A stretch of DNA of 64,000 nt from Macrostomum lignano. Its lineage: Eukaryota. Shown here one piece after another: positions 5,058 to 29,727 of the stretch. The notes under the pieces were generated by a model. The model was not told where the DNA came from. It ran no database searches and saw only the letters and a program-made list of their open reading frames with translations. The stretch lies in the NCBI GenBank assembly GCA_002269645.1, contig NIVC01001504.1, forward strand, positions 1 through 64,000. Direction: 5' to 3'. The translations under genes and the position numbers were made by a program. Numbering within the stretch: position 1 is the stretch's first letter; each line of letters begins with the position of its first letter.

Positions 5058-5106
5058 GGCAGAAAGACAGACAGACAGAGACAGACAGACACTAAGACAG
5101 ACACTA

Positions 5107-5161
<55 letters not shown>

Positions 5162-5252
5162 AAGACAGACAGAGACAGACAGACACTAAGACAGACACTA
5201 AGACAGACAGACAGACAGACATACAGACGGGCAGACAGACAGACAGGCAGGC

Positions 5253-5301
<49 letters not shown>

Positions 5302-5304
5302 CTA

Positions 5305-5357
<53 letters not shown>

Positions 5358-5432
5358 TACAGACAGGCAGATAGACATACAGACAGGCAGACAGACAGGC
5401 AGGCAGACAGACAGGCAGGCAGACAGACAGGC

Positions 5433-5477
<45 letters not shown>

Positions 5478-5572
5478 GGCAGACAGACAGACAGACAGAC
5501 AGACAGACAGGCAGGCAGACAGACAGGCAGACAGACAGACATACAGACGGGCAGACAGACAGACAGGCAGGC

Positions 5573-5621
<49 letters not shown>

Positions 5622-5624
5622 CTA

Positions 5625-5661
<37 letters not shown>

Positions 5662-5736
5662 TACAGACAGGCAGATAGACATACAGACAGGCAGACAGAC
5701 AGGCAGGCAGACAGACAGGCAGGCAGACAGACAGGC

Positions 5737-5769
<33 letters not shown>

Positions 5770-5808
5770 GGCAGACAGACAGACAGACAGGCAGGCAGAC
5801 AGACAGGC

Positions 5809-5845
<37 letters not shown>

Positions 5846-8800
5846 GGAAGGCAGGCAGACAGACAGGCAGGCAGGCAGACTTACCGAAAGTAGACGAGGC
5901 CGTTGGTGGGCTGCGGGCACAGCAGCAGGCGGTCGGGCACGGCCCACTCGGTGCTCCAACGGGGCGCCTGTCGCGGCAGGTCGCCAAGCGCCAGCCGTGG
6001 CAGCGGCCCCGGGTCGGCCCGCGCTGTCTGCGCAGCCAGGAGCTCTTGGGCTTCGCGCCGGACAGCGGCGAGGTCGGCGTTGGCCGCTCGGGCAGTGGCG
6101 GCAGTTTTTTCAGCGGCCAGCAGGCGGTCAGCGTAACGGGCGGTCGGTGCAGCGAGAGCGACAGTCGGTGGGGATTCGAGCGCCAGTGCCGGTCCACCAG
6201 GCTCTGCAGGCAGTTGGGAGATTAATGAGTACCGGTATGAGTAGCAGTAACATGGTATGTAGCTAGTAGTAGTCGTGTAAGCAGTATCAGTAGTATAATA
6301 AGCATTATGAGTAGTATAGTAAGCAGTATTAATAGTATTGTATTTGCAGGTGGCAAATAAGTACCTGCAGATAGCGCGGCTGTTCGGCCAGTGTCCGGCG
6401 CAGGTCTTCCAGCAGATCCTCGGCTGCCAGCAGCTCGGCCAGGTCGGCGCCGTGGTTGGCCGGACCGGCCAGCGCCAGGATCTTCTCCAGGCCGAAGTTG
6501 GCGCCCTCGTCGCGGAGGCCGAGCTCGACCTGGTGCAGCAGGGAGTCCACGTTGACCTGGCGGAATCCGGACCGGACAGTCTCGGCCAGGATGTCGTCGA
6601 CACGCTGGCGGGCGGCGGCCACGGACTCGTCGGCGAGGCCCTTCAGGCCGATGTGGAAGGCCGTGTTGCGGCAGTCGGAGCTGAAGCCGTGCACGGGGGC
6701 GAAGGCGGTGCCGAGGCCGGACTCCAGCAGCCCCGAGTAGAAGGGCGACGTGTCACCTGGGAGCGGCGGGCCGGCGGCCTGAATTACCGAATTTTCTGCT
6801 GGATTCCCTGCTACTCGTCATCATAAATAGGGTCTGCTGCCTCTCAACCCCAATGCACACTTGCTTAAGAGGAAACTGCTGCGGGTCCCTCACCGGCTCT
6901 CCTGCCTGTCATGAGGGGATCCCAGGAGTCCCTCACCAGCTCTCCTGACTGGATCATGAGGGGATCCCAGGAGTCCCTCACCGGCTCTCCTGCCTGTGTC
7001 ATGAGGGGATCCCAGGAGTCCCTCACCAGCTCTCCTGACTGGATCATGAGGGGATCCCAGGAGTCCCTCACCAGCTCCCCTGACTGTCATGAGGGGATCC
7101 CAGGAGTCCCTCACCAGCTCCCCTGACTGTCATGAGGGGATCCCAGGAGTCCCTCACCAGGCCTCCTGACTGTCATGAGGGGATCCCAGGAGTCCCTCAC
7201 CAGCTCCCCTGACTGTCATGAGGGGATCCCAGGAGTCCCTCACCAGGCCTCCTGATTGGATCATGAGGGGATCCCAGGAGTCCCTCACCAGCTTCCCTGA
7301 TTGGATCATGAAGGGATTCCGATGAGTCCCCAGAAGTTGAGCAGGAATTCCAACTATTCCAAGATAAGCCAGATGAAAGCGGCAAATATGCAACAATCGG
7401 CCTTCAAAAGATCACTATAAGACACCCAGCCTCTCTCAGCATGCCGCACCTTCGCAGAGCAGGGAGGACACGAAGTGCAGGTGGAAGTTGTCCCTGACTT
7501 GGCAGACGTCGCCAAACAGGAAGCTCTCGGCCAGGGTGACCTGCCTGTCCGGCGGCAGGAAGGGGTTCAGCGGGCCGTCCACGCGGCCGGCGCGCGCGCT
7601 TGGACCAGCGCGGCTCCAGCGGCACGGCGGTGGCGGAGCAGTCGATGCGGCCGAAGCCGGCCAGGCACTCGCTGTCCAAGAAGCGGAGGTGCTCGGCCAG
7701 CGGCAGGCTGCCGTAGGTGAACACGGTGGCGTTGGACGGGTGGTAGTGGCGCCTGTGGAACTGGAGCAGCTGCTCGTGGCTGAGCTCCGGGATGGCGCCG
7801 GGGAAGCCGCCGAAGTTGTGCCGGTAGGGCCCGGCGGGCAGCAGGTTCTGGCGGACGGCGTTGGAGAACAGCTGGTCGGGGTCGGAGAAGACGCCCTTCA
7901 TCTCGTTGTACACCACGCCCTTGATGGTGATGGGAGACTGCGGCTCCTGCAGGTTGACGGGCTCGAGGCGCCAGCCCTCCTGGATAGGGAGGAGGTTCGA
8001 TTCCTATTATCATTATATCATTGGATGCAATCATCAAGTGCCCTAAAAACCTGGGAGGCCATCTGATCACAATTGTCATCATCAAAACCCCAACATGCCA
8101 ACAGTTCATAATCAGATGCTCTCTAAAATCCCAACAGTTCATAATCAGATGCTCTAAAATCCCAACAGCTCATAATCAGATGCTCTAAAATCCCAACAGT
8201 TCATAATCAGATGCTCTAAAATCCCAACAGTTCATAATCAGATGCTCTAAAATCCCAACAGTTCATAATCAGATGCTCTCTAAAATCCCAACAGTTCATA
8301 ATCAGATGCTCTAAAATCCCAACAGTTCATAATCAGATGCTCTCTAAAATCCCAACAGTTCATAATCAGATGCTCTCTAAAATCCCAACAGTTCATAATC
8401 AGATGCTCTAAAATCCCAACAGTTCATAATCAGATGCTCTAAAATCCCAACAGTTCATAATCAGATGCTCTCTAAAATCCCAACAGTTCATAATCAGATG
8501 CTCTAAAATCCCAACAGCTCATAATCAGATGCTCTAAAATCCCAACAGTTCATAATCAGATGCTCTAAAATCCCAACAGCTCATAATCAGATGCTCTAAA
8601 ATCCCAACAGTTCATAATCAGATGCTCTAAAATCCCAACAGTTCATAATCAGATGCTCTCTAAAATCCCAACAGTTCATAATCAGATGCTCTCTAAAATC
8701 CCAACAGTTCATAATCAGATGCTCTAAAATCCCAACAGTTCATAATCAGATGCTCTAAAATCCCAACAGTTCATAATCAGATGCTCTAAAATCCCAACAG

Positions 8801-9646
8801 CTCATAATCAGATGCTCTAAAATCCCAACAGTTCATAATCAGATGCTCTAAAATCCCAACAGCTCATAATCAGATGCTCTAAAATCCCAACAGTTCATAA
8901 TCAGATGCTCTAAAATCCCAACAGTTCATAATCAGATGCTCTAAAATCCCAACAGTTCATAATCAGATGCTCTAAAATCCCAACAGTTCATAATCAGATG
9001 CTCTAAAATCCCAACAGTTCATAATCAGATGCTCTAAAATCCCAACAGTTCATAATCAGATGCTCTAAAATCCCAACAGTTCATAATCAGATGCTCTAAA
9101 ATCCCAACAGTTCATAATCAGATGCTCTAAAATCCCAACAGCTCATAATCAGATCCCAAATCTCAAGCAGTTGAAATCCCTAAACCACGGGCAGCCAGCG
9201 CTCACCTGCAGAAAGTCCATCCTGCTGAGCAGCGGGTGAAACACGGCGTCCAGGTAAACAGAGAAGAGGTTGTAGAAGTCGGTGGGGTTCTGAGTAGAGC
9301 AGGGGTAGATGGTGAAGTCGGGCGCAGTCATGGCGTTCATGAAGGTGGCCTGGCTGCGGGTGAGCATCTTGAAGAACGGATCCCGCACCGGGTACTTGGC
9401 GGAGCCGCAGAGCACGCTGTGCTCAAGGATGTGCGGCGCCCCGGTGCTGTCAGTCGGGGTGGTCCGCAGCTGGATGGCGAAGGCGTTGTTGGCGTCCTGG
9501 CGAGCCAGGTGCACCAGGCGGCAGCCCGTGGCCTCGTGCACCAGCTCCTCCAGGGTCAGGCGGAAGGTGGGCACCTGGGCGGAGCGCACGTGCCGGAAGC
9601 CGTGCAGCCCGGCGCCCACCGAGGACTGGACGAGACGGACGGCCGA
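3273..9646 (-). CDS. PITRM1: Presequence protease (pitrilysin metallopeptidase 1, M16C family), at least 6 exons, two frame breaks
   Basis: Inverted zinc motif HILEH in TDSTGAPHILEHSVLCGSAKYPVRDPFFKML; also EGWRLE, KGVVYNEMKG, SPFYSGLLESGLG, QPTNGLVYFR, LHREIREIGGAYG and YRDP. Exons: 9206-9646 (alternative acceptor 9672), 7450-7979, 6365-6756, 5885-6203, 4386-4956, 3273-3980, all GT-AG. Exons 7450-7979 (530 nt) and 5885-6203 (319 nt) are each off-phase, with breaks near 7590 and 6150. The 5' exon is not established. Confidence 0.93.
4020..4330. repeat. Intronic minisatellite, 23-bp unit GGGAGGCCAGGCACTCGGGTGAT
   Basis: Near-identical tandem copies inside PITRM1 intron 3981-4385. Confidence 0.92.
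4992..5880. repeat. (GACA/GGCA)n compound microsatellite
   Basis: Fills PITRM1 intron 4957-5884 from about +5 after the donor; contains an internal duplication with 304-bp offset. Confidence 0.95.
6890..7320. repeat. Intronic minisatellite, ~43-46-bp unit (GAGGGGATCCCAGGAGTCCCTCACCAGCTCCCCTGACTGTCAT)
   Basis: Tandem copies in PITRM1 intron 6757-7449. Confidence 0.9.
8090..9150. repeat. Intronic minisatellite, 31/33-bp unit CTCTAAAATCCCAACAGTTCATAATCAGATG
   Basis: More than 30 near-identical copies in PITRM1 intron 7980-9205. Confidence 0.95.
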
Positions 9647-9784
9647 CTGCAGCGGAGGCGTGGGGGGGGGGTCTGACAGGCTGCGTCCGGGTTCAGAATG
9701 CTTGCGGGTTTGCGTGTAAGGCCCAGGAGTTGAGGTTTGAGAGCTGGGGGAGACTGGGTCAGATATGAGACTGTCAGGTGGGAC

Positions 9785-12012
9785 AGATGTGCAACAGACA
9801 GTGTGCAACAGACAGTGTGCAATAGACGGTGTATGCAATAGACAGTGTGCAACAGACAGTGTGCAATAGCCAGTGTGCAATATACTGCGCAATAGACAGT
9901 GTGCAATAGACGGTGTGCAATAGCCAGTGTGCAATAGCCAGTGTGCAATAGCCAGTGTGTGCAATAGCCAGTGTGCAATAGCCAGTGTGCAATAGACAGT
10001 GTGCAATAGCCAGTGTGCAATATACTGCGCAATAGACAGTGTGCAATAGACGGTGTGCAATAGCCAGTGTGCAATAGCCAGTGTGTGCAATAGGCAGTGT
10101 GCAATAGCCAGTGTGCAATATACTGCGCAATAGACAGTGTGCAATAGACGGTGTGCAATAGGCAGTGTCCAATAGCCAGTGTGCAATAGCCAGTGTGCAA
10201 TATACTGCGCAATAGACAGTGTGCAATAGCCAGTGTGCAATAGGCAGTGTGCAATAGCCAGTGTGCAATAGGCAGTGTGCAATAGCCAGTGTGCAATAGC
10301 CAGTGTGCAATAGCCAGTGTGCAATAGCCAGTGTGCAATAGCCAGTGTGCAATAGCCAGTGTGCAATAGGCAGTGTGCAATAGCCAGTGTGCAATAGACA
10401 GTGTGCAATAGACAGTGTGCAATAGCCAGTGTGTGCAATAGACAGTGTGCAATAGCCAGTGTGCAATAGCCAGTGTGCAATAGCCAGTTTGTGCAATAGC
10501 CAGTGTGCAATAGCCAGTTTGTGCAATAGCCAGTGTGCAATAGACAGTTTGTGCAATAGCCAGTGTGCAATAGCCAGTTTGTGCAATAGCCAGTGTGTGC
10601 AATAGCCAGTGTGCAATAGCCAGTTTGTGCAATAGCCAGTGTGTGCAATAGCCAGTGTGCAATAGCCAGTGTGTGCAATAGACAGTGTGCAATAGCCAGT
10701 GTGTGCAATAGACAGTGTGCAATAGCCAGTGTGTGCAATAGCCAGTGTGCAATAGCCAGTGTGCAATAGACAGTGTGCAATAGCCAGTGTGCAATAGACA
10801 GTGTGCAATAGACAGTGTGCAATAGCCAGTGTGCAATAGACAGTGTGTGCAATAGACAGTGTGCAATAGCCAGTGTGCAATAGACAGTGTGCAATAGCCA
10901 GTGTGTGCAATAGACAGTGTGCAATAGCCAGTGTGCAATAGACAGTGTGCAATAGCCAGTGTGTGCAATAGCCAGTGTGCAATAGCCAGTGTGTGCAATA
11001 GACAGTGTGCAATAGCCAGTGTGTGCAATAGACAGTGTGCAATAGCCAGTGTGTGCAATAGACAGTGTGCAATAGCCAGTGTGCAATAGCCAGTGTGTGC
11101 AATAGACAGTGTGCAATAGCCAGTGTGTGCAATAGACAGTGTGCAATAGCCAGTGTGTGCAATAGCCAGTGTGTGCAATAGCCAGTGTGTGCAATAGACA
11201 GTGTGCAATAGCCAGTGTGTGCAATAGCCAGTTTGTGCAATAGCCAGTGTGCAATAGACAGTTTGTGCAATAGCCAGTGTGCAATAGCCAGTTTGTGCAA
11301 TAGCCAGTGTGTGCAATAGCCAGTGTGCAATAGCCAGTTTGTGCAATAGCCAGTGTGTGCAATAGCCAGTGTGCAATAGCCAGTGTGTGCAATAGACAGT
11401 GTGCAATAGCCAGTGTGTGCAATAGACAGTGTGCAATAGCCAGTGTGTGCAATAGCCAGTGTGCAATAGCCAGTGTGCAATAGACAGTGTGCAATAGCCA
11501 GTGTGCAATAGACAGTGTGCAATAGCCAGTGTGCAATAGACAGTGTGTGCAATAGACAGTGTGCAATAGCCAGTGTGCAATAGACAGTGTGCAATAGCCA
11601 GTGTGTGCAATAGACAGTGTGCAATAGCCAGTGTGCAATAGACAGTGTGCAATAGCCAGTGTGTGCAATAGCCAGTGTGCAATAGCCAGTGTGTGCAATA
11701 GCCAGTGTGCAATAGCCAGTGTGTGCAATAGACAGTGTGCAATAGCCAGTGTGTGCAATAGACAGTGTGCAATAGCCAGTGTGTGCAATAGCCAGTGTGC
11801 AATAGCCAGTGTGTGCAATAGACAGTGTGCAATAGCCAGTGTGTGCAATAGCCAGTGTGCAATAGACAGTGTGTGCAATAGCCAGTGTGCAATAGCCAGT
11901 GTGCAATAGACAGTGAGTGCAATAGACAGTGTGTGCAATAGCCAGTGTGCAATAGACAGTGAGTGCAATAGCCAGTGTGCAATAGACAGTGTGTGCAATA
12001 GACGGTGTATGC
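9785..12012. repeat. Large minisatellite, 16/18-bp unit GTGCAATAGCCAGTGT(GT)
   Basis: About 2.2 kb of variant repeats upstream of the first recognisable PITRM1 exon; has a 714-bp higher-order duplication. Confidence 0.95.
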
Positions 12013-12624
12013 AATACAGGGTGCGGATGAGGCAAATGCTATAAAAGAGATTAGGCATAGCCGATGACTAATTCTGTGCCAATAAAAATCAGTAGAAGTG
12101 AAGCCAGTGCAGCCAATAAGCTTTCCACAAGCGGACGCTGAGTTTATAATTAGATGTTGCAGAAACAGTGGCGAGCGCATGAATGGCAGAGGCGAATTAC
12201 AGCAGGTGAATGGGCGCACAGTCAATACATTAATTATTAAAAAACGTGAATACAGCTTGGGCAGAGAATTCGAGTGGCAAATTGAAAATAACAACAGTAA
12301 AAAAGCAGCGGGCAAAACACGAGATCTCACCCTGAATTGAATTCGAATAAGCATTTTTGTTTACAAGAAAAAATGTGAATACAGGTTAGAGATTACTGAA
12401 AAGTACAGCAGAGGCACGAGACCAGGAGACAGACAGCTATACCGGTAATGCTAAAAAATCAACTATTTCAACTGAAATCTGCTAGACAAAGTTTCATTTA
12501 AAAAAAATTCTTTTTCAATTTCAAGGTCGCTAAATATTGCGATGTGAGGAGCACCTGAACACACGGGTGAACGTTTAAAACATAAATAGGCTTTGATACG
12601 GAATTTCTATTAACTTTTAACCGT

Positions 12625-13120
12625 GGCCGAGTCGGTCAGCTGCAGTTGCTGAGTCGGTCAGCTGCAGTTGCTGAGTCAGTCAGCTGCAGTTGCTGAGTCG
12701 GTCAGCTGCAGTTGCTGAGTCGGTCAGCTGCAGTTGCTGAGTCAGTCAGCTGCAGTTGCTGAGTCAGTCAGCTGCTGTTGCTGAGTCGGTCAGTTGCATG
12801 CAGTTGCTGAGTCAGTCAGCTGCAGTTGCTGAGTCAGTCAGCTGCTGTTGCTGAGTCGGTCAATTGCATGCAGTTGCTGAGTCAGTCAGCTGCAGTTGCT
12901 GAGTCAGTCAGCTGCAGTTGCTGAGTCAGTCAGCTGCAGTTGCTGAGTCAGTCAGCTGCAGTTGCTCAGTCAGTCAGCTGCAGTTGCTGAGTCAGTCAGC
13001 TGCTGTTGCTGAGTCGGTCAGTTGCATGCAGTTGCTGAGTCAGTCAGCTGCAGTTGCTGAGTGGGTCAGTTGCATGCAGTTGCTGAGTCGGTCAGCTGCA
13101 GTTGCTGTGTCGGTCAGCTG
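12625..13120. repeat. Minisatellite, 22/26-bp unit GCTGAGTCAGTCAGCTGCAGTT, contiguous with the kinase stop codon
   Basis: Tandem copies; the last unit overlaps the TGA at 13114-13116 (minus strand). Confidence 0.9.
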
Positions 13121-14759
13121 CAGGTGCTGTCGCTGTTAGACCGCAGCTCGGTGCCGGTCTCGGACAGCTGGGAGTCGCCCAGGCGGCTGGATGAGCAGCG
13201 GCTGGACGAGCCGGACTGGGAGGCGGCGCGCCGCGCCTCGGAGCTGCTGGAGGCCGAGCGCTGAGAGGCGGCCGTGGGGGCCGTCACCGCAGACGCTGCG
13301 GTCAGCCAGGCGCAGCGGCGGGCCTCAGCAGCGGCCGGTCGATCGGCGGGGTCTGGGCGGAGGCAGGCGGCCAGGAACTGCCGCGCCGGTTCGGACAGCG
13401 ACTGCGGCAACAACGGCGGCTGGCCGGGCCGGACAGGGGCGGATTTGCGGCCAGTCAGCATGGCAACGGTTACCATGCCAACGGCCCAGATGTCGGCCGG
13501 CTGGCCGCAGGGCCGCCCATCGACGCCTTCAGGAGTTTCGCTGGCGCTGCTGCCGGGGGGCGCCAGGGCCTCTGCGAATCGGAGGGCGGGTGTGGATGGG
13601 TTAGGCAGCTGTGGCAGTGGAATAAGGGGCAGACTGGTCATAGAATAGTCTTCCTGAACTAGAGTGGTCATAGCTTAGAATTGATCATAACTTGGAGTGG
13701 TCATATCCTAAAGTGGTCAAAAGCATAGTGTTGATAAGAATAGTGGTCATAAAACAGGGTGGTAGGAGAAAAGAGTAGTCATAGACTACTAGATTGGTCA
13801 TAGACTACTGGATTGGTCATAGACTACTGGGTTGGTCATAGACTACTGGATTGGTCATAGACTACTGGGTTGGTCATAGACTACTGGGTTGGTCATAGAC
13901 TACTGGAATGGTCATAGACTAATAGATTGGCCATAGAATAGATTGGTCATAGATAACTAGATTTGACAGGCTAGAGAGTTGCCCTGGACTAGATTGATCA
14001 TATACCAGATTGGCCATAGACTAGATTGGTCATCTCACCGCTATCAGGGGAGTCGGGCAGCAAAGCGCAGGCGAAGTCAATGATGAGGAGGCGGGAGTCT
14101 GGGCCCACATGGTAGAAAAGCAGGTTCTCTGTTCGGATGTTGCGGTGCGCGCAGCCGAAGCTGTGCAGGTGGGCGAGGCCGTCCAGCAGCTGGGCGGAGT
14201 AGACGGCGGCCTGGAGCTCCGGCAGGCGGCCGCGCTCGTTCAGCCGCTGCGACAGGCGGTCGCCGGTGGCCAGCTCGAGCACCAGGCACAGGAAGCGGGG
14301 AGTCTCGATGTGCGTCACGCAGCGGACGATGTTGGGATGCCGCGCCCGCCGGATGGCCGACAGCTCCGTGCGGAAGCGGCTGGCGCGGGCCGCCGGCACG
14401 AGCTTCAGCGCGAAGGGCTCGTGGGTGTCCCTGTGGACGGCCTTGAGCACCAGCGAGTTGGAGTGCTCAGTGCGGTGCAGGATGCTGCTCACATTGTACT
14501 TGACCCGGATTGCGCTGTCAATTTGAACTCGCCGAGTCCGGCCGGGATGAAGCTGCTGGTCAGCCTCCGGCTCCGGCTGCTGATTTGCCAGCGACTGCTT
14601 CTGCTGCTTCTCCGGCTTCTGCAGCTGCAGCGGCTGCTGGCTTTTCGGCTTCTTTGGCAAGTCTTCTTCATCGCTGTCCACCGCGTAGCCGTAGCGTTCC
14701 CGGTCCAGCTGGCGGCTCTTCCGCCTGGCCTGCCCGCTGCTGGACTGCGCGCAGCCCAT
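13114..14759 (-). CDS. PSKH (protein serine kinase H)-like CAMK-group protein, probable pseudokinase, 2 exons
   Basis: Start MGCAQS at 14759. Kinase fold: FALK, RTE, HPNIV, LELATG, HRNIRTENLLFYHVGPDSRLLIIDFA (PSKH1 has [26 protein letters not shown]), DIWAVG, LRPDPADRP. Exons 14039-14759 and 13114-13571 join in phase 1 (AGC G|AG GCC). Confidence 0.85.
13760..14032. repeat. Intronic minisatellite, 18-bp unit GATTGGTCATAGACTACT
   Basis: Starts about 6 nt after the kinase donor GTGAG. Confidence 0.85.
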
Positions 14760-14827
14760 CGAGCTAGCGGGAGGCGGCGCTTGGCGACTGGGGAGGCTGC
14801 GGGCCGGAGAGAGAAGCTTGCGTGACC

Positions 14828-14938
14828 ACCTGTCTGCCTGCCTGCCTGCCTGTCTGTCTGCCTGCCTGCCTGCCTGCCTGTCTGTCTGTCTGCCTGCCTG
14901 CCTGTCTGTCTGTCTGTCTGTCTGTCTGCCTGTCTGTC
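14828..14938. repeat. (CTGT/CTGC)n microsatellite
   Basis: Read directly; just upstream of the kinase 5' acceptor at 14797-14798. Confidence 0.85.
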
Positions 14939-15619
14939 CCTCCTTCACTTTTCCATAGCCCACACCACCATTCAAGTCTGCAGGCCAGCTCTGTCCAGTT
15001 ATTTATCAGGCTGCACAAGCAACAAACTGGAAATGCAGACGCAAGTTTGCCTACTGAACTTCCTGCCCCCCCCTCTTTCCTGCCGGGTGCGCTGCAGATA
15101 CAAACTGCCAAAACTGCATCTGAACTCAGGTGCATTGCGCGGCACTTCCTATGACTCCTAGTGACAGAACAAGCTACCGGCACTACTCAAACTGATAGAA
15201 ATCGATCACAACAAAGGAAATAACGCCAGCAGTCAGAGATAGCGTTCAAAGCAATATATTTCCATGAAACCGAACAGCAAACCAAACAATAGATCATTTC
15301 GGAAAACTCATGGCTGTCACCAGGGATAAAACAAAAAATGGATAAATGACAAGCATGGAAAATCAAGTAAGACGAGTAAAAAACACAAAAAATCCACGGC
15401 ACTAAAAGCACTGAGCACCTGCGATGCAAGAATTCCGGTCAGAAAGCGGCCTGCTAAATAATGAATCAATCATCCATAAGTGATGGAATTTGGGGAAAGT
15501 CGGATCAGGAAATCAAATACAAATGATTTATTATTGCATTATTGACAGAATAACCAACATACAGATATGCGACTACAGCAAGCTTTAACTAGGAGCAGAA
15601 ATTCACCGATTTATCCGGC

Positions 15620-16055
15620 TTTCAAGCAGTTGCTATGCGCTCTTTATGTTAGTGTGGTTTTTAAGCAGTTGCTATGCGGTTTTTGTTTGTGTGGTTTCTA
15701 GGCAGTTGGTATGCGGTTTTTTGTTTGTGGTTTCTAGGCAGTTGCTATGCGGTTTTTATGATAGTGTGGTTTCTAAGCATTTGCTATGCGGTTTTTATGT
15801 TAGTGTGGTTTCTAAGCAGTTGCTATGCGGTTTTTGTTTGTGTGGTTTCTAGGCAGTTGGTATGCGGTTTTTTGTTTGTGGTTTCTAGGCAGTTGCTATG
15901 CGGTTTTTATGATAGTGTGGTTTCTAAGCAGTTGCTATGCGGTTTTTATGATAGTGTGGTTTCTAAGCAGTTGCTATGCGGTTTTTATGTTAGTGTGGTT
16001 TCCAAGCAGTTGCTATGCGGTTTTTATGTTAGTGTGGTTTCTAAGCAGTTGCTAG
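15620..16055. repeat. Minisatellite, ~39-bp unit GTTGCTATGCGGTTTTTATGTTAGTGTGGTTTCTAAGCA
   Basis: Begins about 10 nt downstream of the ACY1 stop codon. Confidence 0.9.
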
Positions 16056-16063
16056 CCGGGCTC

Positions 16064-19000
16064 TCAGGCAGCGGGGCAGTCGGCAACGTCGGGAATGATG
16101 GCGGTGTACAGCTCCACGCCGCGCAGGAAGACCTCCCGGTTGAGGAACTCGTTGTGGTCGTGCAGCAGGACGGGGGTTCGATTCATCGGGGAGAAGCCGA
16201 TGGCGCTGATGCCCAGGGAGCGCAGGTAGCGGCTGTCGGTGGCGGCTGGGAAGATCTCGGGCTCGATGGTCATGCCGAGCCGCTGGCAGGAGCCGGCAAA
16301 GGCCGACCACCACGGGTTCCGCTCCGACGTGTCCGTCGGCTTGCCGGCGTCGAACTTCTGCATGAACTCCAGCGACACGCCCGGCCCGGCCTCCTCGCAC
16401 CAGCGGCGCAGCTCCGCCTCGAAGTGGACGAGATTGACGTCGGGAGCGATGCGGCAGTCCACGTCAAGACAGAGCTTCTCCGGCAGCACGTTGGTCTGCA
16501 CCCCGCCGTTCATCTGCGTCAGGTTCAGTGTGGTCACCTCGCCAAGGCGGATGCCGCGGCCGCGCTCCAGGCGCTCCACCTGGAGAGAACGCGATGCGAT
16601 TTGGTACTGCTCAAATGGCACTCAGTGAGCTACTCAAATGGCATTCAGTGAGCTACTCAAAGTGGCACTCAATAATGCTCAAAGTGGCACTCAATAATGC
16701 TCAAAGTGGCACTCAATAATGCTCAAAGTGGCACTCAATAATGCTCAATGTGGCACTCAATAATGCTCAAATTGGCACTCAATAATGCTCAAAGTGGCAC
16801 TCAATAATGCTCAAATTGGCACTCAATAATGCTCAAAGTGGCACTCAACAATGCTCAGTGGCTGTCGCACCTGACTGTCCCTGAAGCGGTAGAGCCGCTG
16901 GATCAGCTTGGCCGCCTTCTCCCCTGCCGTGTCCTCCATCAGCCGGGAGCCGTGCCCGGGCTGGCCGCGGATCTCGAAGCGAAGCCACCAGACGGAGCGC
17001 TCGCCATAGTAAACTGTGAAGGCCTCGGTGGGGTTGGCCAGGCCTTCGTCCATGGCGCAGCCGACGTTCAGGCTGCGGAACTTGTCGGACTGGCAGAACT
17101 TGCCCATGCCCAGCTTGCCGGTCACCTGGCGGGCAAGGCAAATGCAGGTGGGCTGGCGTGACTGGCGTGACACACGGAGTGACACTTGGAGATCGGGGCT
17201 TAATAACTGGTGTGACACACGGAGTGACACTTGGAGATCGGAGCTTAATAACTGGTGTGACACACAGAGTGACACTGGAGATGGGAGATTAATAACTGGT
17301 GTGACACACAGTGACACGGGAGATGGGAGCTTAATAACTGGTGTGACACACAGAGTGACACGGGAGATGGGAGCTTAATAACTGGTGTGACACACGGAGT
17401 GACACTTGGAGATCGGAGCTTAATAACTGGTGTGACACACGGAGTGTCACCTGGAGATCGGAGCTTAATAACTGGTGTGACACACGGAGTGACACTTGGA
17501 GATGGGGGCTTAATAACTGGTGTGACACATGGAGATGGGAGATTAATAACTGGTGTGACACATGGAGATGGGAGATTAATAACTGGTGTGACACACGGAG
17601 TGACACTTGGAGATGGGAGCTAAATAACTGGTGTGACACACGGAGTGTCACCTGGAGATCGGAGCTTAATAACTGGTGTGACACACGGAGTGTCACCTGG
17701 AGATTGGAGCTTAATAACTGGTGTGACACACGGAGTGTCACCTGGAGATCGGAGCTAAATAACTGGTGTGACACACGGAGTGTCACCTGGAGATCGGAGC
17801 TTAATAACTGGTGTGACACACGGAGTGACACTTGGAGATCGGAGCTTAATAACTGGTGTGACACACAGAGTGACACTGGAGATGGGAGATTAATAACTGG
17901 TGTGACACACAGTGACACGGGAGATGGGAGCTTAATAACTGGTGTGACACACAGAGTGACACGGGAGATGGGAGCTTAATAACTGGTGTGACACACGGAG
18001 TGACACTTGGAGATCGGAGCTTAATAACTGGTGTGACACACGGGAGTGTCACCTGGAGATCGGAGCTTAATAACTGGTGTGACACACGGAGTGACACTTG
18101 GAGATGGGGGCTTAATAACTGGTGTGACACATGGAGATGGGAGATTAATAACTGGTGTGACACATGGAGATGGGAGATTAATAACTGGTGTGACACACGG
18201 AGTGTCACCTGGAGATTGGAGCTTAATAACTAGTGTGACACACGGAGTGTCACCTGGAGATCGGAGCTAAATAACTGGTGTGACACACGGAGTGTCACCT
18301 GGAGATCGGAGCTTAATAACTGGTGTGACACACGGAGTGACACTTGGAGATCGGAGCTTAATAACTGGTGTGACACACGGAGTGTCACCTGGAGATCGGA
18401 GCTTAATAACTGGTGTGGCACACGGAGTGACACGTTAGATGCGAGCTTAATAACTACTGACACACGGAGTGATACTAAGAGATTGGAGCTTTATAACTTG
18501 TGTGACACACTGAGTGACACTTAGTCAGCCAGAATTCACAAAGCTGCCCCAATGCGAAGCCAGCATTCGACACCGAATCAGAGTTTCAGCCCCCCAGCTG
18601 CATGTCAGGCCAGTGCCGCAATAAACCAAGTTGATCTGCGCAGAAAACTGAAAGCAGAGCGGCCCGAGCTGAAGAGTGCAAAGCTGCCGACGCCGACAAA
18701 GTGCAGTGCAGTCCTGTGCCCACCCAGTGACTTTCAAGCTAACCGAGATTGAAACACTGAGACACAAAATGCCAACAGAAGACCCCATCAACCCACCTCT
18801 TCATCGGGCATGAAGCTGAGGTAGATATTTCTCTTAGGCTGGTAGTTGGCAGCCTTGAGCTTGCGCAGCGCCTCCAGGTACTGCACGGCCACGCACTTCA
18901 TGTCCTGGGCGCCACGGGCGTAGATGTTGCCCTGCTCGTCCATGTCAGCTGAGAACGGGTCGCAGCGCCAGTGCTTGGGGAACACCGGCACAACATCCAT

Positions 19001-19246
19001 GTGGCTGTTGAGCAGCAGGGAGGTCCGGTTCGGCTCGCTGCCAGGCCAGCGCATGATGAGTACGGGCTGGCCGGGGTGGCACTCGATGCACTCGGAGTCC
19101 AGACCGAGCTCGGCCGCCTGGCCCCGCAGCCAGGCCACTGCGGAGACGCAGTCCGGCCGCGGGTGCATCGTGTTGATGCGCAGGTAGGCCCGGAAATTCT
19201 CCACGGCCTGCTGCCGCTCCGGCTCGCTAAGCACCAGCGGGGACGC
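16064..19246 (-). CDS. ACY1: Aminoacylase-1 (M20A family), 3 visible exons, no genomic ATG at the 5' end
   Basis: Motifs LLLNSHMDVVP, YARGAQDMK, PDEE, DEGLANPT, GQPGHGSR, PAATDSRY and SPMNRTPVLLHDHNE. Exons 18797-19246, 16871-17125 and 16064-16579 join in phase 0 with GT-AG junctions and no frame breaks. Confidence 0.95.
16605..16857. repeat. Intronic minisatellite, 22-bp unit CTCAAAGTGGCACTCAATAATG
   Basis: Fills ACY1 intron 16580-16870 almost end to end. Confidence 0.9.
17165..18525. repeat. Intronic minisatellite, ~45-bp unit GTGACACACGGAGTGACACTTGGAGATCGGAGCTTAATAACTGGT
   Basis: Fills ACY1 intron 17126-18796; has a 601-bp higher-order duplication. Confidence 0.93.
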
Positions 19247-19304
19247 CTGTGGGAGTTCAGCATCTGGCCAATCTTCAATAATCTCAGTGCGCGGCAGCTT
19301 CCTT

Positions 19305-19490
19305 TCATAGCCTCATCACATTCCAGCCTCCTGGCATAGCCTCATCACATTCCAGCCTCCTGGCATAGCCTCATCACATTCTAGCCTCCTGGCATAGCCT
19401 CATCACATTCTAGCCTCCTGGCATAGCCTCATCACATTCTAGCCTCCTGGCATAGCCTCATCACATTCTAGCCTCCTGGTATAGCCTCAA
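19305..19490. repeat. Minisatellite, 29-bp unit GCCTCCTGGCATAGCCTCATCACATTCTA
   Basis: About 6 copies starting ~60 nt upstream of the ACY1 5' acceptor. Confidence 0.88.
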
Positions 19491-22081: not shown

Positions 22082-24794
22082 GGGTGATGGTCATTTCGTC
22101 AACTGGCGTTTCGTCAACTCGGTTGACGAAGTGACCAAAATGTTAAGGCGACTTTACTGGTGGTTGACGAAGTGACCAATGCCTAGGTCCTCCCCATTTG
22201 CTTGTTGACGAAGTGACCAAAATTGTCATTATATGAATGATATATGTATTTCATATAGCAGCGTAGCTTACAATAGTTGTTATATCGATGAGTTTGTTTT
22301 AATAATTATCTAGTTTTATTTGAAACGATAAAACTTTGCAATTTCGTTACAGCTAGTGTTCAGTATATATGTTAACTGCATGCCCATTATACATGTTTTC
22401 GATAGGTTAAATGTTCCGATGCGAATATACTAGATGCAAATGCGTCACCTATGCACACTCATACCCATATGCGTCCGGGCGTCAATGAATCTTAAGCATT
22501 TGTGTTTTATGCAATCTGCATACAGTACATGCGTCCACGTACATGGTGCATTCATACTATCAAAACGCATCAAGAGGACTGCTATAATAGTCCCCTGTGG
22601 AGTCGTGAAAATTGGTGGACTGCAGCGTGCACCTTCCCACCCTTCCACCCCGCTGTGCGCAGTCAACCGAAGCTGATCCCCCGCAGCGAATCTTGATATC
22701 CGGTAATGCTCTCGAAGCATATCATGCACGATTCACGCAAATCATGCCATATTGTAAGCCATTTTACTCCCTGTCATGCTTAACCCTAAAGTGCTAAGCC
22801 AGTGTTAAGTCCCTTACACCCCACCAGTTCTAAAGTCACCCCACCCTAACGATCCGAACTGCTATATAAATGGAAGTCCCGTCAAAATTTACCAGGACCA
22901 GCAGCTCCACCAGTCGCAAGGCTAGCACCAGCTACGGTCGCAGAGCCAGCATCAGCTCAGGTCGCACAGCCAGCACCAGCTCCAGTCGCAGATCCAGCAC
23001 CAGCTCTGGTCGCAGAGCCAGCACCAGCTCCAGTCGCAGAGCCAGCACCAGCTCCAGTCGCAGAGCCAGCACCAGATCAGGTCGCACAGCCAGCACCAGC
23101 TCCAGTCGCAGATCCAGCACCAGCTCTGGTCGCAGAGCCAGCAGAGGGGGATGAACAAGGTCTTTTGGAGAAATTGTATGCTGCCGATGCTGGTAAGTGC
23201 CTGATATGAGAGATATCAGAGAGATCCTTTCTCTCTCCTCTCTTCTCTCCCTCACTCAACTCACTCACTCACCTTCACATTGCTCTTCACACCACCCCCC
23301 ATCTCTCTCTGTTACACTCACATCCACAAAAAACATCCACAAAACATTGACTATAATATCTTGTCATCATCACATGCAGGGCCATTCGAAGAACCAGCTC
23401 GCGTGGCCGAGGTCTCGATGGAGGGTCCGGAGCCTCATGACCTGCCTGCAGTCGTTGTGGCGGAGGAGTTCGAGGTGCTGGATGCTGCCACGACAAAGCG
23501 CAAGCCCTTACTCATTCAACGACTGGGTGACCAAGAATACGTTTTGGGCCTCAATTTCGAAAAAAATAACAGACGCTATTGGCGTTGCACCCAGCGCAAT
23601 TCAAGGTTTAAGTGCCCAGCATCAGCCATCCAGGACAATCAAGGTATTCGGAGTGGCCAGGCTGCCCACATCTGCGAGCCACGAATTCGTGAGTCGGTGA
23701 AGCGTCGCGTTGTCGCTGTGGTCAAGGATGAAGCAAAGCGGCAGTGCTTTCGGTCAGCTGCTGCAATCGTGGAGTCGAAGCTGCTAGACCATAGCGTGAC
23801 TGACTTTGGCCAGGAGGTACCCGCTATTCGTCAACTGGTGCGGATCGCAAACAGAGCTCGGGAAGCTGAGCGTCCAGTGCCCCCATCTGACCTCCAGTTC
23901 GATCTGGCTATGGACCGTATTCCTCCAGATTTCGTTCGGGCTGACATCCGAGTTGAAGGAACTGGCAAGCGCCATTTGCTGCTTTTTACTACGAATCAAA
24001 TCGAGCTGCTGGCATCCCGTCGGCTATGGTTTCTAGACGGCACTTTTGCGCTTCGTACATGAACCATATGCTGTTGTAATGTAATGTAAAGTTTCCAAGA
24101 AGTCCTAATATTGCAATTTTCTTAAAATAATATATTTTTCTTTTGTCTGCGTTTAGTACCGTATTACCGCTTACCGTACAGAACTACATGTACTATTATA
24201 GGTTTTAAGTATAGTGTGTGCATATAATATATATTATTATATAAATTTTAATGCGTGATTGACATCGACATAACCATAAATGGAATGGTTAATTTGGAAT
24301 GCTTTATATATTTTTTTAAATACACCATGTAGAGTGGACCATTTGAAGCGTTATTATCTTTGGTCCAGTACTCATCAACTACTCCTTAATGAATTTCTAC
24401 ATGTACATCCAAAAATTTGTCATGCAAATGTGTAACATGGGATATCAACCGCGTCATACTGCACACGTTTCAAAACACATTGTTTGTTAATGTATAGTCA
24501 GAGACGCATCGATCGAAGCCGGCAGATGTTGCGCAGAAGGGTATCTATATATATTAATTAGCCTGTGGACTTAGTCATTTCAGGGTTCAGTTTTTGTTTT
24601 TTTGCGGCCGCGGGGGGTAGTTTATTGGCAGTTGACGAAGTGACCAATGTTGGGGAACTCCCCGTTGGTCAGTTGACGAAATGACCGAGGTTTGAGATCG
24701 CTTCATTGGCTAGTTGACGAAACGACCAATGCAAAAACTGAGTTGACGAAATGGCCAGTTGACGAAACGCCAGTTGACGAAATGACTAGGACCC
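22082..24794 (+). mobile_element. Mutator-like (MULE) DNA transposon, internally deleted derivative (2713 bp)
   Basis: TIRs GGGTGATGGTCATTTCGTCAACTGGCGTTTCGTCAACT and (reverse complement) GGGTCCTAGTCATTTCGTCAACTGGCGTTTCGTCAACT; repeated GTTGACGAA motifs at both ends; 8-bp TSD ACGTCAAT at 22074-22081 and 24795-24802; encodes a FLYWCH plus MULE fragment. Confidence 0.88.
22870..24062 (+). pseudogene. Truncated FLYWCH-type zinc finger / MULE transposase
   Basis: Exon 1 carries a PAPAPVAE (24-bp) repeat and needs a 1-nt correction near 22890 to be in frame with ATG 22870. Intron 23193-23379 (GTAAGT...CATGCAG) joins in phase 1. Exon 2 has YWRCTQRNSRFKCPAS...HIC, then WFLDGTF (first catalytic Asp), then a stop. 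Confidence 0.8.
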
Positions 24795-26601: not shown

Positions 26602-27616
26602 TCAGCGCGGCTTGTGCCAGTACCGGAAGTGAGTCCACAAGGAGCTGCAGCTGTAGAATCGCACAGCGCAGATGCGGCAGACAAATGGCTTTTCTCCGGT
26701 GTGCCGCCGCACGTGATCATTCAGTTGAGACAACCGCTTGAAGCCTCTCTGGCAGTGGCTGCATTTGTGAGGCCGCCCGGCTGTGGACTGGCCATGGCCG
26801 GGTGTGAATGCCTTGCTGCACTCACCCGTGTGCAGCTGGGAGCTGTCATCGTACTGGCTGCAGGCAGACTGCTTCTGCCCGTTGATCAGGTTGGCAGAGT
26901 CCTTCAAAGCCGAGCGGCTCTGGCCAAGCTGACAAGGCCGTCCAGCCGAGTGCAGTCGCCGCAGGTGCTCCGCCAGGGCGCTCGATTGAGTGAAACGCCG
27001 CTGGCACTGACCGCACTCGAACGGCCGCTCACCCGTGTGCACCACAAGGTGCCTCTTCAATTTGCTCTGGCAGTTGAACTGCTTCCCGCACTCTTCGCAC
27101 TGGAGCAGCCGCTCGCCCGTATGCACCACAAGGTGCCTTTTCAGATTGCTCTGGCGGTCAAACCGCTTCCCGCACTCTTCGCACTGGAACGGCCGCTCGC
27201 CCGTATGCACCACAAGGTGCCTCTTCAGTTTGCTCTGGCAGTTGAACCGCTTCCCGCACTCACCGCACTGGAACGGCCGCTCGCCCGTGTGCACCACAAG
27301 GTGCCTTTTCAGATTGCTCTGGCGGTCAAACCGCTTCCCGCACTCTTCGCACTCGAACGGCCGCTCGCCCGTGTGCATCACAAGGTGCCTCTTCAGTTTG
27401 CTCTGGCAGTTGAACCGCTTCCCGCACTGACCGCACCGGTGCCGCCTCTGTGCGCCATCCGAGTGAGTCAGAACGTGCTGCAGGTACCGGGCCGCCTGCC
27501 CATCGGAGAACGCCTTCTTGCACATCGGGCAGCTGGTGCCGCTGCTCTGCCGTGGCTCCGGCTGGCCCGCCATCTCTGCGCAGAGCTCTGCAACATCGGA
27601 TGCGAGTAGCGGGCAG
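26602..27616 (-). CDS. C2H2 zinc-finger protein, 9 fingers
   Basis: Tandem CxxC...HxxxH fingers with TGERPF/TGEKPF linkers; open frame to the stop at 26602. Acceptor at 27617-27618 (phase 2); first in-frame ATG at 27573. Confidence 0.9.
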
Positions 27617-28202
27617 CTGGTCAAGCAGTGAGAATAGGCAGACTAATCTCTAATCTTAATTAATCTCCAACGATCATGAGCCAGTTTTTGCTACAGGAGG
27701 GGGCTGTGCACCCTGGCGCACTTTAAGCAACAGTCACACAACCGGCGAGAGGCATTGCTGCCCATGAGCAGACACACAAGTGCACAAACACACTCACACA
27801 GGAGTGTACAGCGGTGACTAACTTTCTTTATCGTTTATGGGCATGTACTGTACACTTCCCCTGTGCCTTGGAGGTTGGCGTTCAAGGGCGTCAATTGCAC
27901 TAGCAGTTCCCTGTTCAAATTAATGTGACTGCACTTGGAATCGGCACATCAAAGCGTCGCGCCAGGCGACCATTATGTACCAATAGCAGACTAAATAAAT
28001 TAGACTAGCCTATGACAAATACTTAGGCATCTATTTCCGCCTAAGCAAAGTAAAATTGAAATGAAAAATTCCGATTGATTGAGCGAAGAAAAAAGCCATG
28101 TAGGGAGAGCATTTGCGTATTTATCCAATTAGTAAAAGGCGGGACTTTCAATAAGTAGCGCAAGATTCGGATCGCAGTGTAGGGGGCAGCGGGGAAGGCG
28201 GG

Positions 28203-29528
28203 TCAGTGCTTGAGCGGCAGGCGGGCAATGACGGCCTTGTGGAGGCCGGTGACCTGGTTGGCCAGCTTGTCCATGGTCTGGTATTGCTGCTGCACAGCGG
28301 CCCGCTCGATCACCAGCACCTGAGCCTGCTGGTCGATCTTGCCAACGATGAGGTTGTCCAGGATGCAGGACACGATGAGGGCCTCGACCTCGGCCTGGTC
28401 GATGTTGAGCTGCGCCGAGATGAAGGGGATGCGGATGCGAGTGTAGGGCTGAATGAGGCGGCACAGCACCTGCGTGCGGACGTTGCGCAGCAGCTCCTCG
28501 ATGTGCTCCCGGATGAAGGGGTCCTCCATGATGGCCGCCCGGTGCTGCCGGAGCAGCTGCTCAAAGCTGTGGATGTCGTTGGCATGGTAGGCGGCCACCA
28601 GGCTGGTCATGGCGGTGACCTCGGGGTCGTTGCGGTAGGGCTTGGCCTCCTGACTGTCCAGCGGGTTGATGCCCACCTGGCGCAGCATGCTGGCGAGCAC
28701 CAGGTACTTCAGGCACTGGATGCGGCGCGGGCTGCCGGACTCGTCGTAGTTTTTGAACGCCTCGAAGAAGTCGGTGTGCGCCTGCTCGAACTCGGCCTCG
28801 CGCAGGTGCATCTTGCCGCCGCACTCGCGAATGATGCCCATGATGAGCGGGTGCGGGATGGCCGACTTGATGTTCAGCGACTGGTTGTACAGGTCCTTCA
28901 GCTTCTTGTTGTTCTTCTGCAAGGTGTACATCTGGATCTCCAGGGCGAAGATCTCCAGCAGGTTGGTGCCCTTCTTGCTGTCCAGCTCGCCGTCCTCGGT
29001 CTCGCATGAGGCGCGCAGCTCCTTAATGATCCGCTGCAGCAGCGGCCACTCCGCATTGTCCAGGTACAGCTTGCCGAGCTTGAGGTTGGCCTTGAACCAC
29101 AGCCGGTCGTTCTTCGCCTCCTTGAGCGCGTTCAGCGTGGTGTGGTAGAAGTTGAGCAGCAGGTCGTTCTGCTTGGAGGTGCTCACATAGTCCAGGATGG
29201 AGTTAATGGACTTCTCAGAGTAGTTGCGGGTCACAGCCTTTTTGATGTACGTCAGCAGCTCCTTGTACAGCCTCATCATCTCGTCGAACCGGCCGAGCCG
29301 GAAGTTGATCTTCATCATCTGCTTGAGCGCCTTGAAGCCCCAGTCGCCCTTCTCTGCGCCCTCCAGGTCGAGCACCTTCTGGTACTCCTTGAGCGCCAGC
29401 TCAGGATTCTCGTCCTTCAGAGTCTTGGAGTTGTAGTACTGGTTCTCCAGCTCCACGTTGGTGTCCTCCGGGGACGAGTCGAAGTCCAGCTCGTCCATGT
29501 CGCTGAAGTCGTCATCGTCGCTGTCCAT
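28203..29528 (-). CDS. COPS2: COP9 signalosome subunit 2, single coding exon (441 aa)
   Basis: MDSDDDDF...[104 protein letters not shown]-terminal PCI domain; uninterrupted ORF. Confidence 0.97.
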
Positions 29529-29727
29529 GGCTCGGCGAGGACGCTCAGGAATACGGCATGGATCGGTGCTGGAGCAACTTGCAAATCCACAATTACAAAT
29601 GTGTGGAGATAAACAATAAGAAGCTTGCAACAATGCAAGATGTGAACTATGAAGATGTGAACTATCTATCAGGACACCCAGTATAGTTCATTGGCATGTA
29701 TATTTAGCATGCTTGAATCTTAAAAAG

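What the first reader, a model, noticed from the sequence alone, without database searches (positions are those of the whole stretch)
18797..19260. ACY1 lacks its own start codon but opens with a phase-0 acceptor: candidate spliced-leader-donated AUG
Seen: the first ACY1 exon begins after CCCACAG| at 19246 with GCG TCC CCG CTG GTG..., exactly in frame. The protein is already at its expected N-terminus, and the first in-frame ATG (INTM) lies inside the conserved FRxYLRIxT segment. No upstream coding exon is visible. Established: flatworm spliced leaders end in AUG, and in schistosomes that AUG can serve as the initiator. Inference: SL + GCG gives M-A-S-P-L-V-L-S-E..., so the start codon would come in trans.
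Basis: partly seen in the sequence, partly recalled or inferred. Interest (0 to 1): 0.7.

Follow-up and report, generated by a model that had tools for sequence, protein, structure and literature searches.

The report
Start codon supplied by spliced leader
The aminoacylase-1 gene of the flatworm Macrostomum lignano has no start codon of its own and almost certainly borrows the AUG at the end of the trans-spliced leader RNA, a mechanism already known in schistosomes, so it is a real but fairly ordinary case.

Summary
The window is Macrostomum lignano scaffold NIVC01001504.1, in the record's own coordinates. ACY1 lies on the minus strand in three coding exons. The first begins at 19246, right after ctcccacag. 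In frame upstream there are 22 ATG-free codons and then TGA TGA. The first in-frame genomic ATG is codon 27, inside the conserved FRxYLRIxT motif.

The GenBank CDS (PAA67140.1, "partial") starts at exactly 19246. A second, independent annotation (UniProt) also lacks a Met. Third-position GC is 92% in codons 1-26 and 45% in the 22 codons upstream, so codons 1-26 look translated. The published 35-nt M. lignano spliced leader ends in ATG, and I saw it on an RNA contig of a related Macrostomum. SL-ATG plus exon 1 gives MASPLV..., an N-terminus of normal ACY1 length.

I could see neither SL reads at 19246 nor any translation data, so initiation at the SL AUG is inferred (confidence about 0.8).

Flatworm SL AUGs are known initiators (Cheng et al. 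2006), so this is a new member of a known kind. PITRM1, and probably a KH-domain gene, in the same window show the same dependence, so it may be common in this species. Interest is low to moderate.

The parts
19247..19255 (-). 3' splice acceptor ctcccacag| used for SL trans-splicing (the AG is at 19248-19247)
   Evidence: Sequence. It matches 5 of 6 positions of the published M. lignano trans-acceptor motif [T/C]TNCAG. The CAG is conserved in both paralogous loci, which read cccGcag. The GenBank CDS begins at the next base.
18797..19246 (-). ACY1 coding exon 1 (150 codons, ASPLVLSEPERQQ...FMPDEE), phase 0 at both ends, donor GAG|gtgggt
   Evidence: Pfam Peptidase_M20/M28 hits. Of 14 differences from the paralogue, 12 are synonymous. 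Third-position GC is 92% in codons 1-26.
19166..19168 (-). First in-frame genomic ATG (Met27 of the annotated protein), context ACG ATG C; it lies inside the conserved FRxYLRIxT(V/M) motif
19313..19318 (-). Two in-frame stop codons (TGA TGA), 22 codons upstream of the acceptor; they close the reading frame in the outron
19306..19489 (.). 29-nt tandem repeat (6.3 copies) in the outron just upstream of the acceptor. Copy number differs among the three paralogous loci, so this stretch is not coding.
16871..17125 (-). ACY1 coding exon 2 (85 codons)
   Evidence: The resulting protein is identical to PAA67140.1.
16064..16579 (-). ACY1 coding exon 3 (171 codons plus the TGA stop at 16066-16064)
   Evidence: Pfam M20_dimer and M20 hits.

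Best explanation
The ACY1 pre-mRNA is transcribed from somewhere upstream of 19246. Its 5' outron is removed by spliced-leader trans-splicing at ctcccacag|G. The 35-nt M. lignano leader (...CAATTTATTGCATG) is joined directly to GCG TCC CCG.... The leader's 3'-terminal AUG, about 33 nt from the cap, is then in frame with the ACY1 reading frame and serves as the initiator. The product is a 407-residue enzyme, M-A-S-P-L-V-L-S-E-P-E-R-Q-Q-A-V-E-N-F-R-A-Y-L-R-I....

Shown here: the gene structure, the lack of a genomic start codon, the phase-0 acceptor, the coding signature that starts at the acceptor, the annotated transcript end at that base, and the existence and sequence of an AUG-terminated leader in Macrostomum.

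Inferred: that the leader is joined at this particular site, and that ribosomes start at its AUG.
For: (1) The window is NIVC01001504.1 of the Mlig_3_7 assembly. Its ACY1 CDS runs 16064..19246, is 5'-partial and begins ASPLV.

(2) That annotation pipeline cuts transcripts at peaks of SL-containing reads after trimming the leader (PMC5730564). A 5'-partial CDS that begins at the first base after an AG means the transcript model itself starts there.

(3) All five consecutive minus-strand genes (COPS2, a zinc-finger gene, ACY1, a kinase, PITRM1) have annotated CDS starts 0-2 nt after an AG. The background chance is 0.17 per gene, or 1.6e-4 for all five.

(4) The leader CGGTCTCTTACTGCGAAGACTCAATTTATTGCATG ends in ATG, and 30-39% of M. 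lignano genes receive it. A Logan RNA contig of a related Macrostomum COPS2 mRNA starts with the last 27 nt of this leader, ATG included.

(5) SL-ATG plus exon 1 is in frame.

(6) Third-position GC is 24/26 in codons 1-26, against 17/25 and 10/25 in the other two frames. It is 10/22 in the in-frame codons upstream of the acceptor (Fisher p = 5e-4) and 91% over the whole CDS. Both paralogue differences within codons 1-26 are synonymous. So codons 1-26 behave as translated sequence.

(7) With the SL Met there are 18 residues before the conserved Phe. The 99 orthologues have 8-32, with a mode of 15.

(8) No annotated gene or exon lies in the 7.3 kb upstream. A scan there for ATG...|GT[AG]AG mini-exons in phase found 3, against 4.1 +/- 2.3 expected by chance.

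(9) Precedent: the S. mansoni SL AUG is in frame in 28% of trans-spliced cDNAs, and more than 40 of them require it (Cheng et al. 2006, as summarised in PMC9851317). For Macrostomum, PMC10468722 notes that the leader likely contains the translation start ATG.
Against: I saw no SL-bearing read or cDNA for ACY1 itself. Two protein searches aimed at RNA-derived N-terminal fragments found none from Macrostomum.

The SL AUG has a weak -3 position (U). It must be bypassed in other mRNAs. It is out of frame in the kinase (an 11-codon uORF), in the zinc-finger gene (a 40-codon overlapping ORF) and in the related-species COPS2 mRNA (a 44-codon overlapping ORF). Leaky scanning to Met27, which has A at -3, could therefore yield some truncated protein.

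The acceptor matches only 5 of 6 positions of the published trans-acceptor motif.

The paralogous loci are more than 97% identical, even in non-coding DNA. They give almost no evolutionary test of the junction.
Confidence: 0.8

Rival explanations
1. The mRNA is trans-spliced at 19246, but translation starts mainly at the internal Met27 after leaky scanning past the weak SL AUG. The product would be an ACY1 that lacks its first 26 residues.
For: The SL AUG has U at -3, while Met27 has A at -3. In other Macrostomum mRNAs the SL AUG is out of frame and must be bypassed.
Against: Codons 1-26 have frame-specific GC3 of 92%, equal to the rest of the CDS, and only synonymous paralogue differences. 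Met27 sits inside the conserved FRxYLRIxT motif, so starting there would delete that motif. The human ACY1 crystal structure aligns from query residue 11 onward. At this position the orthologues mostly have Val, not a conserved Met.
Confidence: 0.08
2. A short upstream exon carrying an ATG, missed by the annotators, is cis-spliced to the acceptor at 19246.
For: The acceptor would serve equally well for cis-splicing. Parasitic flatworms share acceptors between cis- and trans-splicing (PMC12582326). Orthologue N-termini reach 32 residues before the conserved Phe, so up to about 14 more residues would be tolerable.
Against: Two independent RNA-supported annotations start at or 3 nt before the acceptor, without a Met. 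No annotated feature lies in the 7.3 kb upstream. The phase-compatible ATG...GT[AG]AG candidates number 3, against 4.1 expected by chance, and they have low GC3. Neighbouring genes show the same pattern of 5' ends at acceptors.
Confidence: 0.07
3. This copy is a decaying duplicate that has lost its start codon and is not translated into functional enzyme.
For: M. lignano is a recent polyploid with many redundant copies. Three ACY1 loci exist.
Against: All three copies have intact 406-codon frames, the same acceptor and no ATG. Exon 1 differences are 12 synonymous to 2 non-synonymous. GC3 is 91%. No ATG-bearing copy was found among the cluster members.
Confidence: 0.03

Closest known systems
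[quoted passage not shown]
   Same: An SL RNA whose exon ends ...UUGCAUG. Trans-splicing to a phase-0 acceptor at the very start of the coding region. A recipient mRNA with no usable AUG of its own. A predicted protein that starts with the SL-encoded Met.
   Different: The species and lineage differ: a free-living macrostomorph, not a parasitic trematode. For M. lignano no reporter or proteomic proof exists, and none of the M. lignano papers I searched describes SL-AUG use. The closest is one remark on Macrostomum generally, that the leader likely contains the start ATG. Here 2-3 genes in one 64-kb window seem to need it. In S. mansoni 'more than 40 cDNAs' were reported to need it.
slORFs: reading frames created by SL-borne start codons in nematodes, Oikopleura and trypanosomes (slORFfinder, PMC9851317)
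   Same: The start codon is provided in trans by the leader.
   Different: Those cases mostly use near-cognate NUG codons inside the leader, and often create alternative or overlapping frames. Here a canonical AUG at the leader's last three bases opens the gene's only full-length conserved frame.
Ordinary genes whose ATG lies in a short upstream cis-spliced exon
   Same: The first large coding exon begins at an acceptor and lacks an ATG.
   Different: No such exon is annotated or detectable here, and the organism has an AUG-terminated leader that fits in frame.

Membership tests
SL-donated initiator AUG (flatworm type) | The organism has an SL RNA whose leader exon ends in AUG, immediately followed by a GU donor | tested here: met
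   The published M. lignano leader ends ...TTGCATG and is followed by GTAAG (PMC8629364). A Logan RNA contig of a related Macrostomum starts with 27 nt of that leader, ATG included. No SL RNA gene lies in the window itself.
SL-donated initiator AUG (flatworm type) | The mRNA's 5' end is an SL trans-splice acceptor, shown by SL-bearing reads or cDNA at that base | not testable with these tools
   No read-level data are reachable. Indirect support: the GenBank transcript and CDS start at the first base after cag|, in an annotation whose boundaries come from SL-read peaks. Five neighbouring genes show the same pattern, p about 1.6e-4.
SL-donated initiator AUG (flatworm type) | The SL AUG is in frame with the main ORF, with no intervening stop | tested here: met
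   ATG + GCG TCC CCG... reads MASPLVLSEPERQQ... straight into the ACY1 frame.
SL-donated initiator AUG (flatworm type) | No genomic in-frame AUG is available upstream of the conserved N-terminal region, so the SL AUG is required and not merely in frame | tested here: met
   There are 22 ATG-free codons back to TGA TGA. The first in-frame ATG is codon 27, inside the conserved motif. GC3 shows that codons 1-26 are coding.
SL-donated initiator AUG (flatworm type) | Translation initiates at the SL AUG | not testable with these tools
   This needs ribosome profiling, N-terminal proteomics or a reporter assay.
Aminoacylase-1 (peptidase family M20A) | M20 catalytic domain plus M20 dimerisation domain, with full-length similarity to ACY1 | tested here: met
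   52-55% identity over 96-98% of the length to metazoan ACY1. Pfam PF01546 and PF07687 hits. Human ACY1 structure 1Q7L matches at E = 1e-66.
SL-resolved operon (polycistronic unit), by the criterion of Ustyantsev & Berezikov 2021 | Adjacent same-strand genes, the downstream one trans-spliced, with a repeat-adjusted spacer below 1 kb | tested here: met
   ACY1 to kinase is 1267 nt raw and 723 nt adjusted. Kinase to PITRM1 is 3467 nt raw and 776 nt adjusted. I did not observe a polycistronic precursor RNA.

The most novel reading that the evidence does not exclude
In Macrostomum lignano, handing the start codon over to the spliced leader may be pervasive rather than an occasional accident. In this one window ACY1, PITRM1 and probably a KH-domain gene, out of about six trans-spliced genes examined, have no usable genomic ATG. 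If that is typical, a large share of the thousands of GenBank 'partial' M. lignano proteins are really complete once the SL Met is added. The same weak SL AUG would then have to be used efficiently on some mRNAs and bypassed on others, which implies a selective initiation mechanism that has not been described.
Probability: 0.4. Interest if true: 0.5.

Novelty: new member of a known kind. Interest (0 to 1): 0.3.

Why it matters
For annotation: M. lignano proteins deposited as "partial" at trans-splice sites, including ACY1 (PAA67140.1, PAA93817.1, PAA59806.1), are probably full length once the leader's Met is added. Pipelines that trim the whole leader, ATG included, systematically lose start codons.

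For biology: M. lignano is the transgenic flatworm model. Constructs built from such genes need either the outron and acceptor or an artificial ATG.

For evolution: conserved housekeeping genes that depend on the SL AUG in a basal free-living flatworm would show that this use of the leader is old and widespread in the phylum, not a trematode peculiarity. The mechanism itself is not new.

Tried and rejected
(1) I searched the protein collection for RNA-derived (Logan or ENA) N-terminal fragments of Macrostomum ACY1 and PITRM1, hoping to read the leader on the transcript. The best hits were only 58-64% identical and came from other phyla. This was a dead end. The full-length search and the cluster listing also contain no Met-initiated version.

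(2) I used the paralogous loci L001 and L002 to look for a drop in conservation at the exon boundary. The copies are more than 97% identical even upstream, so the comparison says little beyond acceptor conservation and variable repeat number.

(3) I considered reading the '.g2' suffix of Mlig017827.g2 as 'second gene of an operon'. I rejected this. The suffix numbers copies within a cluster of similar transcripts, since paralogous ACY1 copies on different scaffolds are g2 and g3 of Mlig004050.

(4) I looked for the gene identifiers in the literature and in supplements. Nothing was found.

(5) I searched the window for an SL RNA gene. There is none.

(6) I tried to fetch the public annotation of the KH-domain gene with my spliced model.

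(7) Cheng et al. 2006 and Wasik et al. 2015 are not held in the library. Their content is cited only through papers that summarise them.

Full report
**What the window is.** The spliced ACY1 model I built from the window is identical to GenBank PAA67140.1, 'hypothetical protein BOX15_Mlig017827g2, partial [Macrostomum lignano]'. The look-up of that protein returned scaffold NIVC01001504.1 of assembly GCA_002269645.1, with the gene at record positions 16064-19246. These are the same numbers as in the window. So the window is the first 64 kb of that scaffold, in the record's own coordinates.

**The observation.** ACY1 is on the minus strand and has three coding exons:
- 19246-18797
- 17125-16871
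- 16579-16064 (includes the stop)

All junctions are canonical, GT...AG and phase 0. The protein has 406 residues and is 52-55% identical to ACY1 of molluscs, annelids and vertebrates over 96-98% of its length. It has the M20 and M20-dimer domains. It matches the human ACY1 structure 1Q7L at E = 1e-66.

Exon 1 starts ...gaactcccacag|GCG TCC CCG CTG GTG. Reading the same frame upstream gives 22 codons without ATG and then TGA TGA. The ATGs nearby are in another frame. The first in-frame ATG is codon 27. In an alignment with 99 full-length orthologues it falls on the last position of the conserved FRxYLRIxT(V) motif. The window has no assembly gaps.

**Are codons 1-26 translated?** M. lignano coding sequence has a very strong third-position GC bias. 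For ACY1 it is 369/407, or 91%.
- Codons 1-26 score 24/26 in the ACY1 frame, against 17/25 and 10/25 in the other two frames.
- The 22 in-frame codons just upstream of the acceptor score 10/22.
- The next 300 nt upstream score 44-52% in every frame.
- The contrast across the acceptor has Fisher p = 5e-4.

Against the two paralogous loci, exon 1 shows 12 synonymous and 2 non-synonymous differences. The two differences inside codons 1-26 are both synonymous. The coding signature therefore begins at 19246, not at Met27 and not further upstream. A start codon has to be supplied by splicing.

**Where the start codon comes from.** M. lignano has one 35-nt spliced leader, CGGTCTCTTACTGCGAAGACTCAATTTATTGCATG, followed in the SL RNA gene by GTAAG. 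Between 30 and 39% of its genes receive it (PMC8629364, PMC5730564).

I could confirm the leader on RNA. A Logan contig from run SRR30276812 encodes COPS2 of a related Macrostomum (89% nucleotide and 97% amino-acid identity to the window's COPS2). It begins with the last 27 nt of exactly this leader, ending ATG, joined to the 5' UTR.

Adding ATG to the exon gives MASPLVLSEPERQQAVENFRAYLRI... That leaves 18 residues before the conserved Phe, where the orthologues have 8-32 with a mode of 15.

**Is 19246 really a trans-splice site?** I could not see reads. The public annotation was made by a pipeline that trims the leader from SL-containing reads, maps them, and cuts transcript models at the resulting peaks.

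A CDS flagged 5'-partial that begins at the first base after an AG means that the transcript model begins there. If the model reached further upstream, the ORF caller would have met the TGA TGA and chosen Met27.

The same holds for all five consecutive minus-strand genes:
- COPS2 at 29543
- a C2H2 zinc-finger gene at 27585/27587
- ACY1 at 19246
- a protein kinase at 14795/14796
- PITRM1 at 9646

Each annotated CDS starts 0-2 nt after an AG. The chance expectation is 0.17 per gene, or 1.6e-4 for all five.

The older, independent annotation in UniProt starts one codon earlier (QASPLV...) and also has no Met. No gene or exon is annotated in the 7.3 kb between the zinc-finger gene and ACY1. My scan of that interval for an ATG-containing mini-exon that could splice in phase found 3 candidates against 4.1 +/- 2.3 expected by chance. 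None of them looked coding.

**Mechanism and its weak points.** The best explanation is SL trans-splicing at 19246, with the leader's terminal AUG as initiator (confidence 0.8). The steps that remain inferred are the physical SL junction at this gene and the use of the AUG by ribosomes.

One real caveat comes from the neighbours:
- In the kinase the SL AUG would open an 11-codon uORF that ends 4 nt before the gene's own MGCAQSS start.
- In the zinc-finger gene it opens a 40-codon out-of-frame ORF.
- In the related-species COPS2 mRNA it opens a 44-codon out-of-frame ORF that overlaps the real start.

So ribosomes must often pass the SL AUG, which has U at -3. On the ACY1 mRNA some of them may then start at Met27, which has A at -3. 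The composition and conservation of codons 1-26 argue that the full-length form is the one under selection.

**Comparison with what is known.** This is the mechanism described for Schistosoma mansoni by Cheng et al. (J Biol Chem 2006). As summarised in PMC9851317, the SL AUG is in frame in 28% of trans-spliced cDNAs and more than 40 require it. It is repeated as a general property of flatworm leaders in PMC12582326 and PMC5832876.

[quoted passage not shown] The dedicated M. lignano trans-splicing study does not discuss it.

The ACY1 case is thus a new member of a known kind. The gene meets every defining feature I could test. Two features could not be tested: SL reads at the site, and initiation at the SL AUG.

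**Seen in passing.**
- *PITRM1.* Its CDS starts at 9646 after ctgcag|TCG, in phase with the SL AUG. This gives MSAVRLVQSSVGAGLHGFRHVRSAQ..., which is basic, has no acidic residues, and looks like a short mitochondrial presequence. The next in-frame ATG lies beyond the HILEH zinc-binding motif. GC3 is 95/100 downstream and 28/50 upstream of the acceptor.
- *A KH-domain (FUBP-like) gene on the plus strand.* It has gttgcag|GCG at 51431 in phase, a TGA nine codons upstream, its first Met at residue 68, and GC3 of 59/68 against 29/50.
- *Operon spacing.* Repeat-adjusted spacers of 723 nt and 776 nt put ACY1, the kinase and PITRM1 within the published operon criterion.

Two or three genes in one window depending on the SL AUG suggests that the phenomenon is common in this species. 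That is the most novel reading the data allow.

**Verdict.** The finding is real and its interpretation is very probably right, but it is an instance of an established flatworm mechanism in a gene already deposited as 5'-partial at this base. Interest is 0.3.

Noticed in passing
window 9347-9655 (minus strand; acceptor ctgcag| with first exon base 9646): PITRM1 (presequence protease) also lacks a genomic start. Its annotated 5'-partial CDS begins at a phase-0 acceptor, and SL-ATG gives MSAVRLVQSSVGAGLHGFRHV.... The next in-frame ATG lies beyond the HILEH zinc motif. GC3 is 95/100 in the exon and 28/50 upstream. The upstream 'ORF' is just an open frame through a 2.2-kb tandem repeat.
   Followed up: partly
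window 51380-51640 (plus strand; acceptor gttgcag| with first exon base 51431): A KH-domain (FUBP-like) gene appears to start at a phase-0 acceptor that matches the TTNCAG trans-splice motif. There is an in-frame TGA nine codons upstream, and the first in-frame Met is at residue 68. GC3 is 59/68 against 29/50 upstream. This is a third candidate for an SL-donated start.
   Followed up: partly
window 14740-14800 (minus strand): In the kinase gene, SL trans-splicing at cgcag|C (first exon base 14796) would put the SL AUG out of frame. It would form an 11-codon uORF that ends 4 nt before the gene's own MGCAQSS start, a myristoylation-type N-terminus. The SL AUG must be bypassed, or the ribosome must reinitiate.
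   Followed up: partly
window 27540-27600 (minus strand) and L004 1-160: In the zinc-finger gene (ttgcag|AG, first exon base 27587) and in the related-species COPS2 mRNA contig, the SL AUG opens out-of-frame ORFs of 40 and 44 codons that overlap the real start codons. In the window's own COPS2 (first exon base 29543) it is in frame and would add MRPRRA before the genomic Met. So the frame of the SL AUG is not conserved where a genomic ATG exists.
   Followed up: partly
window 9646-19246 and 26602-29543 (minus strand): There are five tandem same-strand genes. The repeat-adjusted spacers are 723 nt (ACY1 to kinase), 776 nt (kinase to PITRM1) and 615 nt (COPS2 to zinc-finger gene). All are under the 1-kb operon criterion published for M. 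lignano, so there are candidate operons of three and two genes. The 7.3-kb spacer before ACY1 does not meet the criterion.
   Followed up: partly
window 23280-24062 (plus strand): An ORF with a FLYWCH zinc-finger domain (Pfam E = 2e-5), followed by a ...WFLDGTF... motif, lies in the spacer upstream of ACY1. It is probably a remnant of a MULE-type transposon on the opposite strand.
   Followed up: partly
whole window, e.g. 8098-9154, 9788-11993, 15620-16054, 16610-16857, 17161-18522, 19306-19489: Almost every intron and intergenic spacer is filled with tandem repeats of 14-45-nt units, up to 2.2 kb long. These create long spurious ORFs, and their copy number differs between paralogous loci.
   Followed up: no
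window 6753-9646 versus L001 19873-23161: In the window's scaffold the PITRM1 model is only 324 residues and ends at 6753. The paralogous locus carries a 986-residue model. The window copy is either split by the annotation or interrupted. PITRM1-like ORFs continue at 3273-6700.
   Followed up: no
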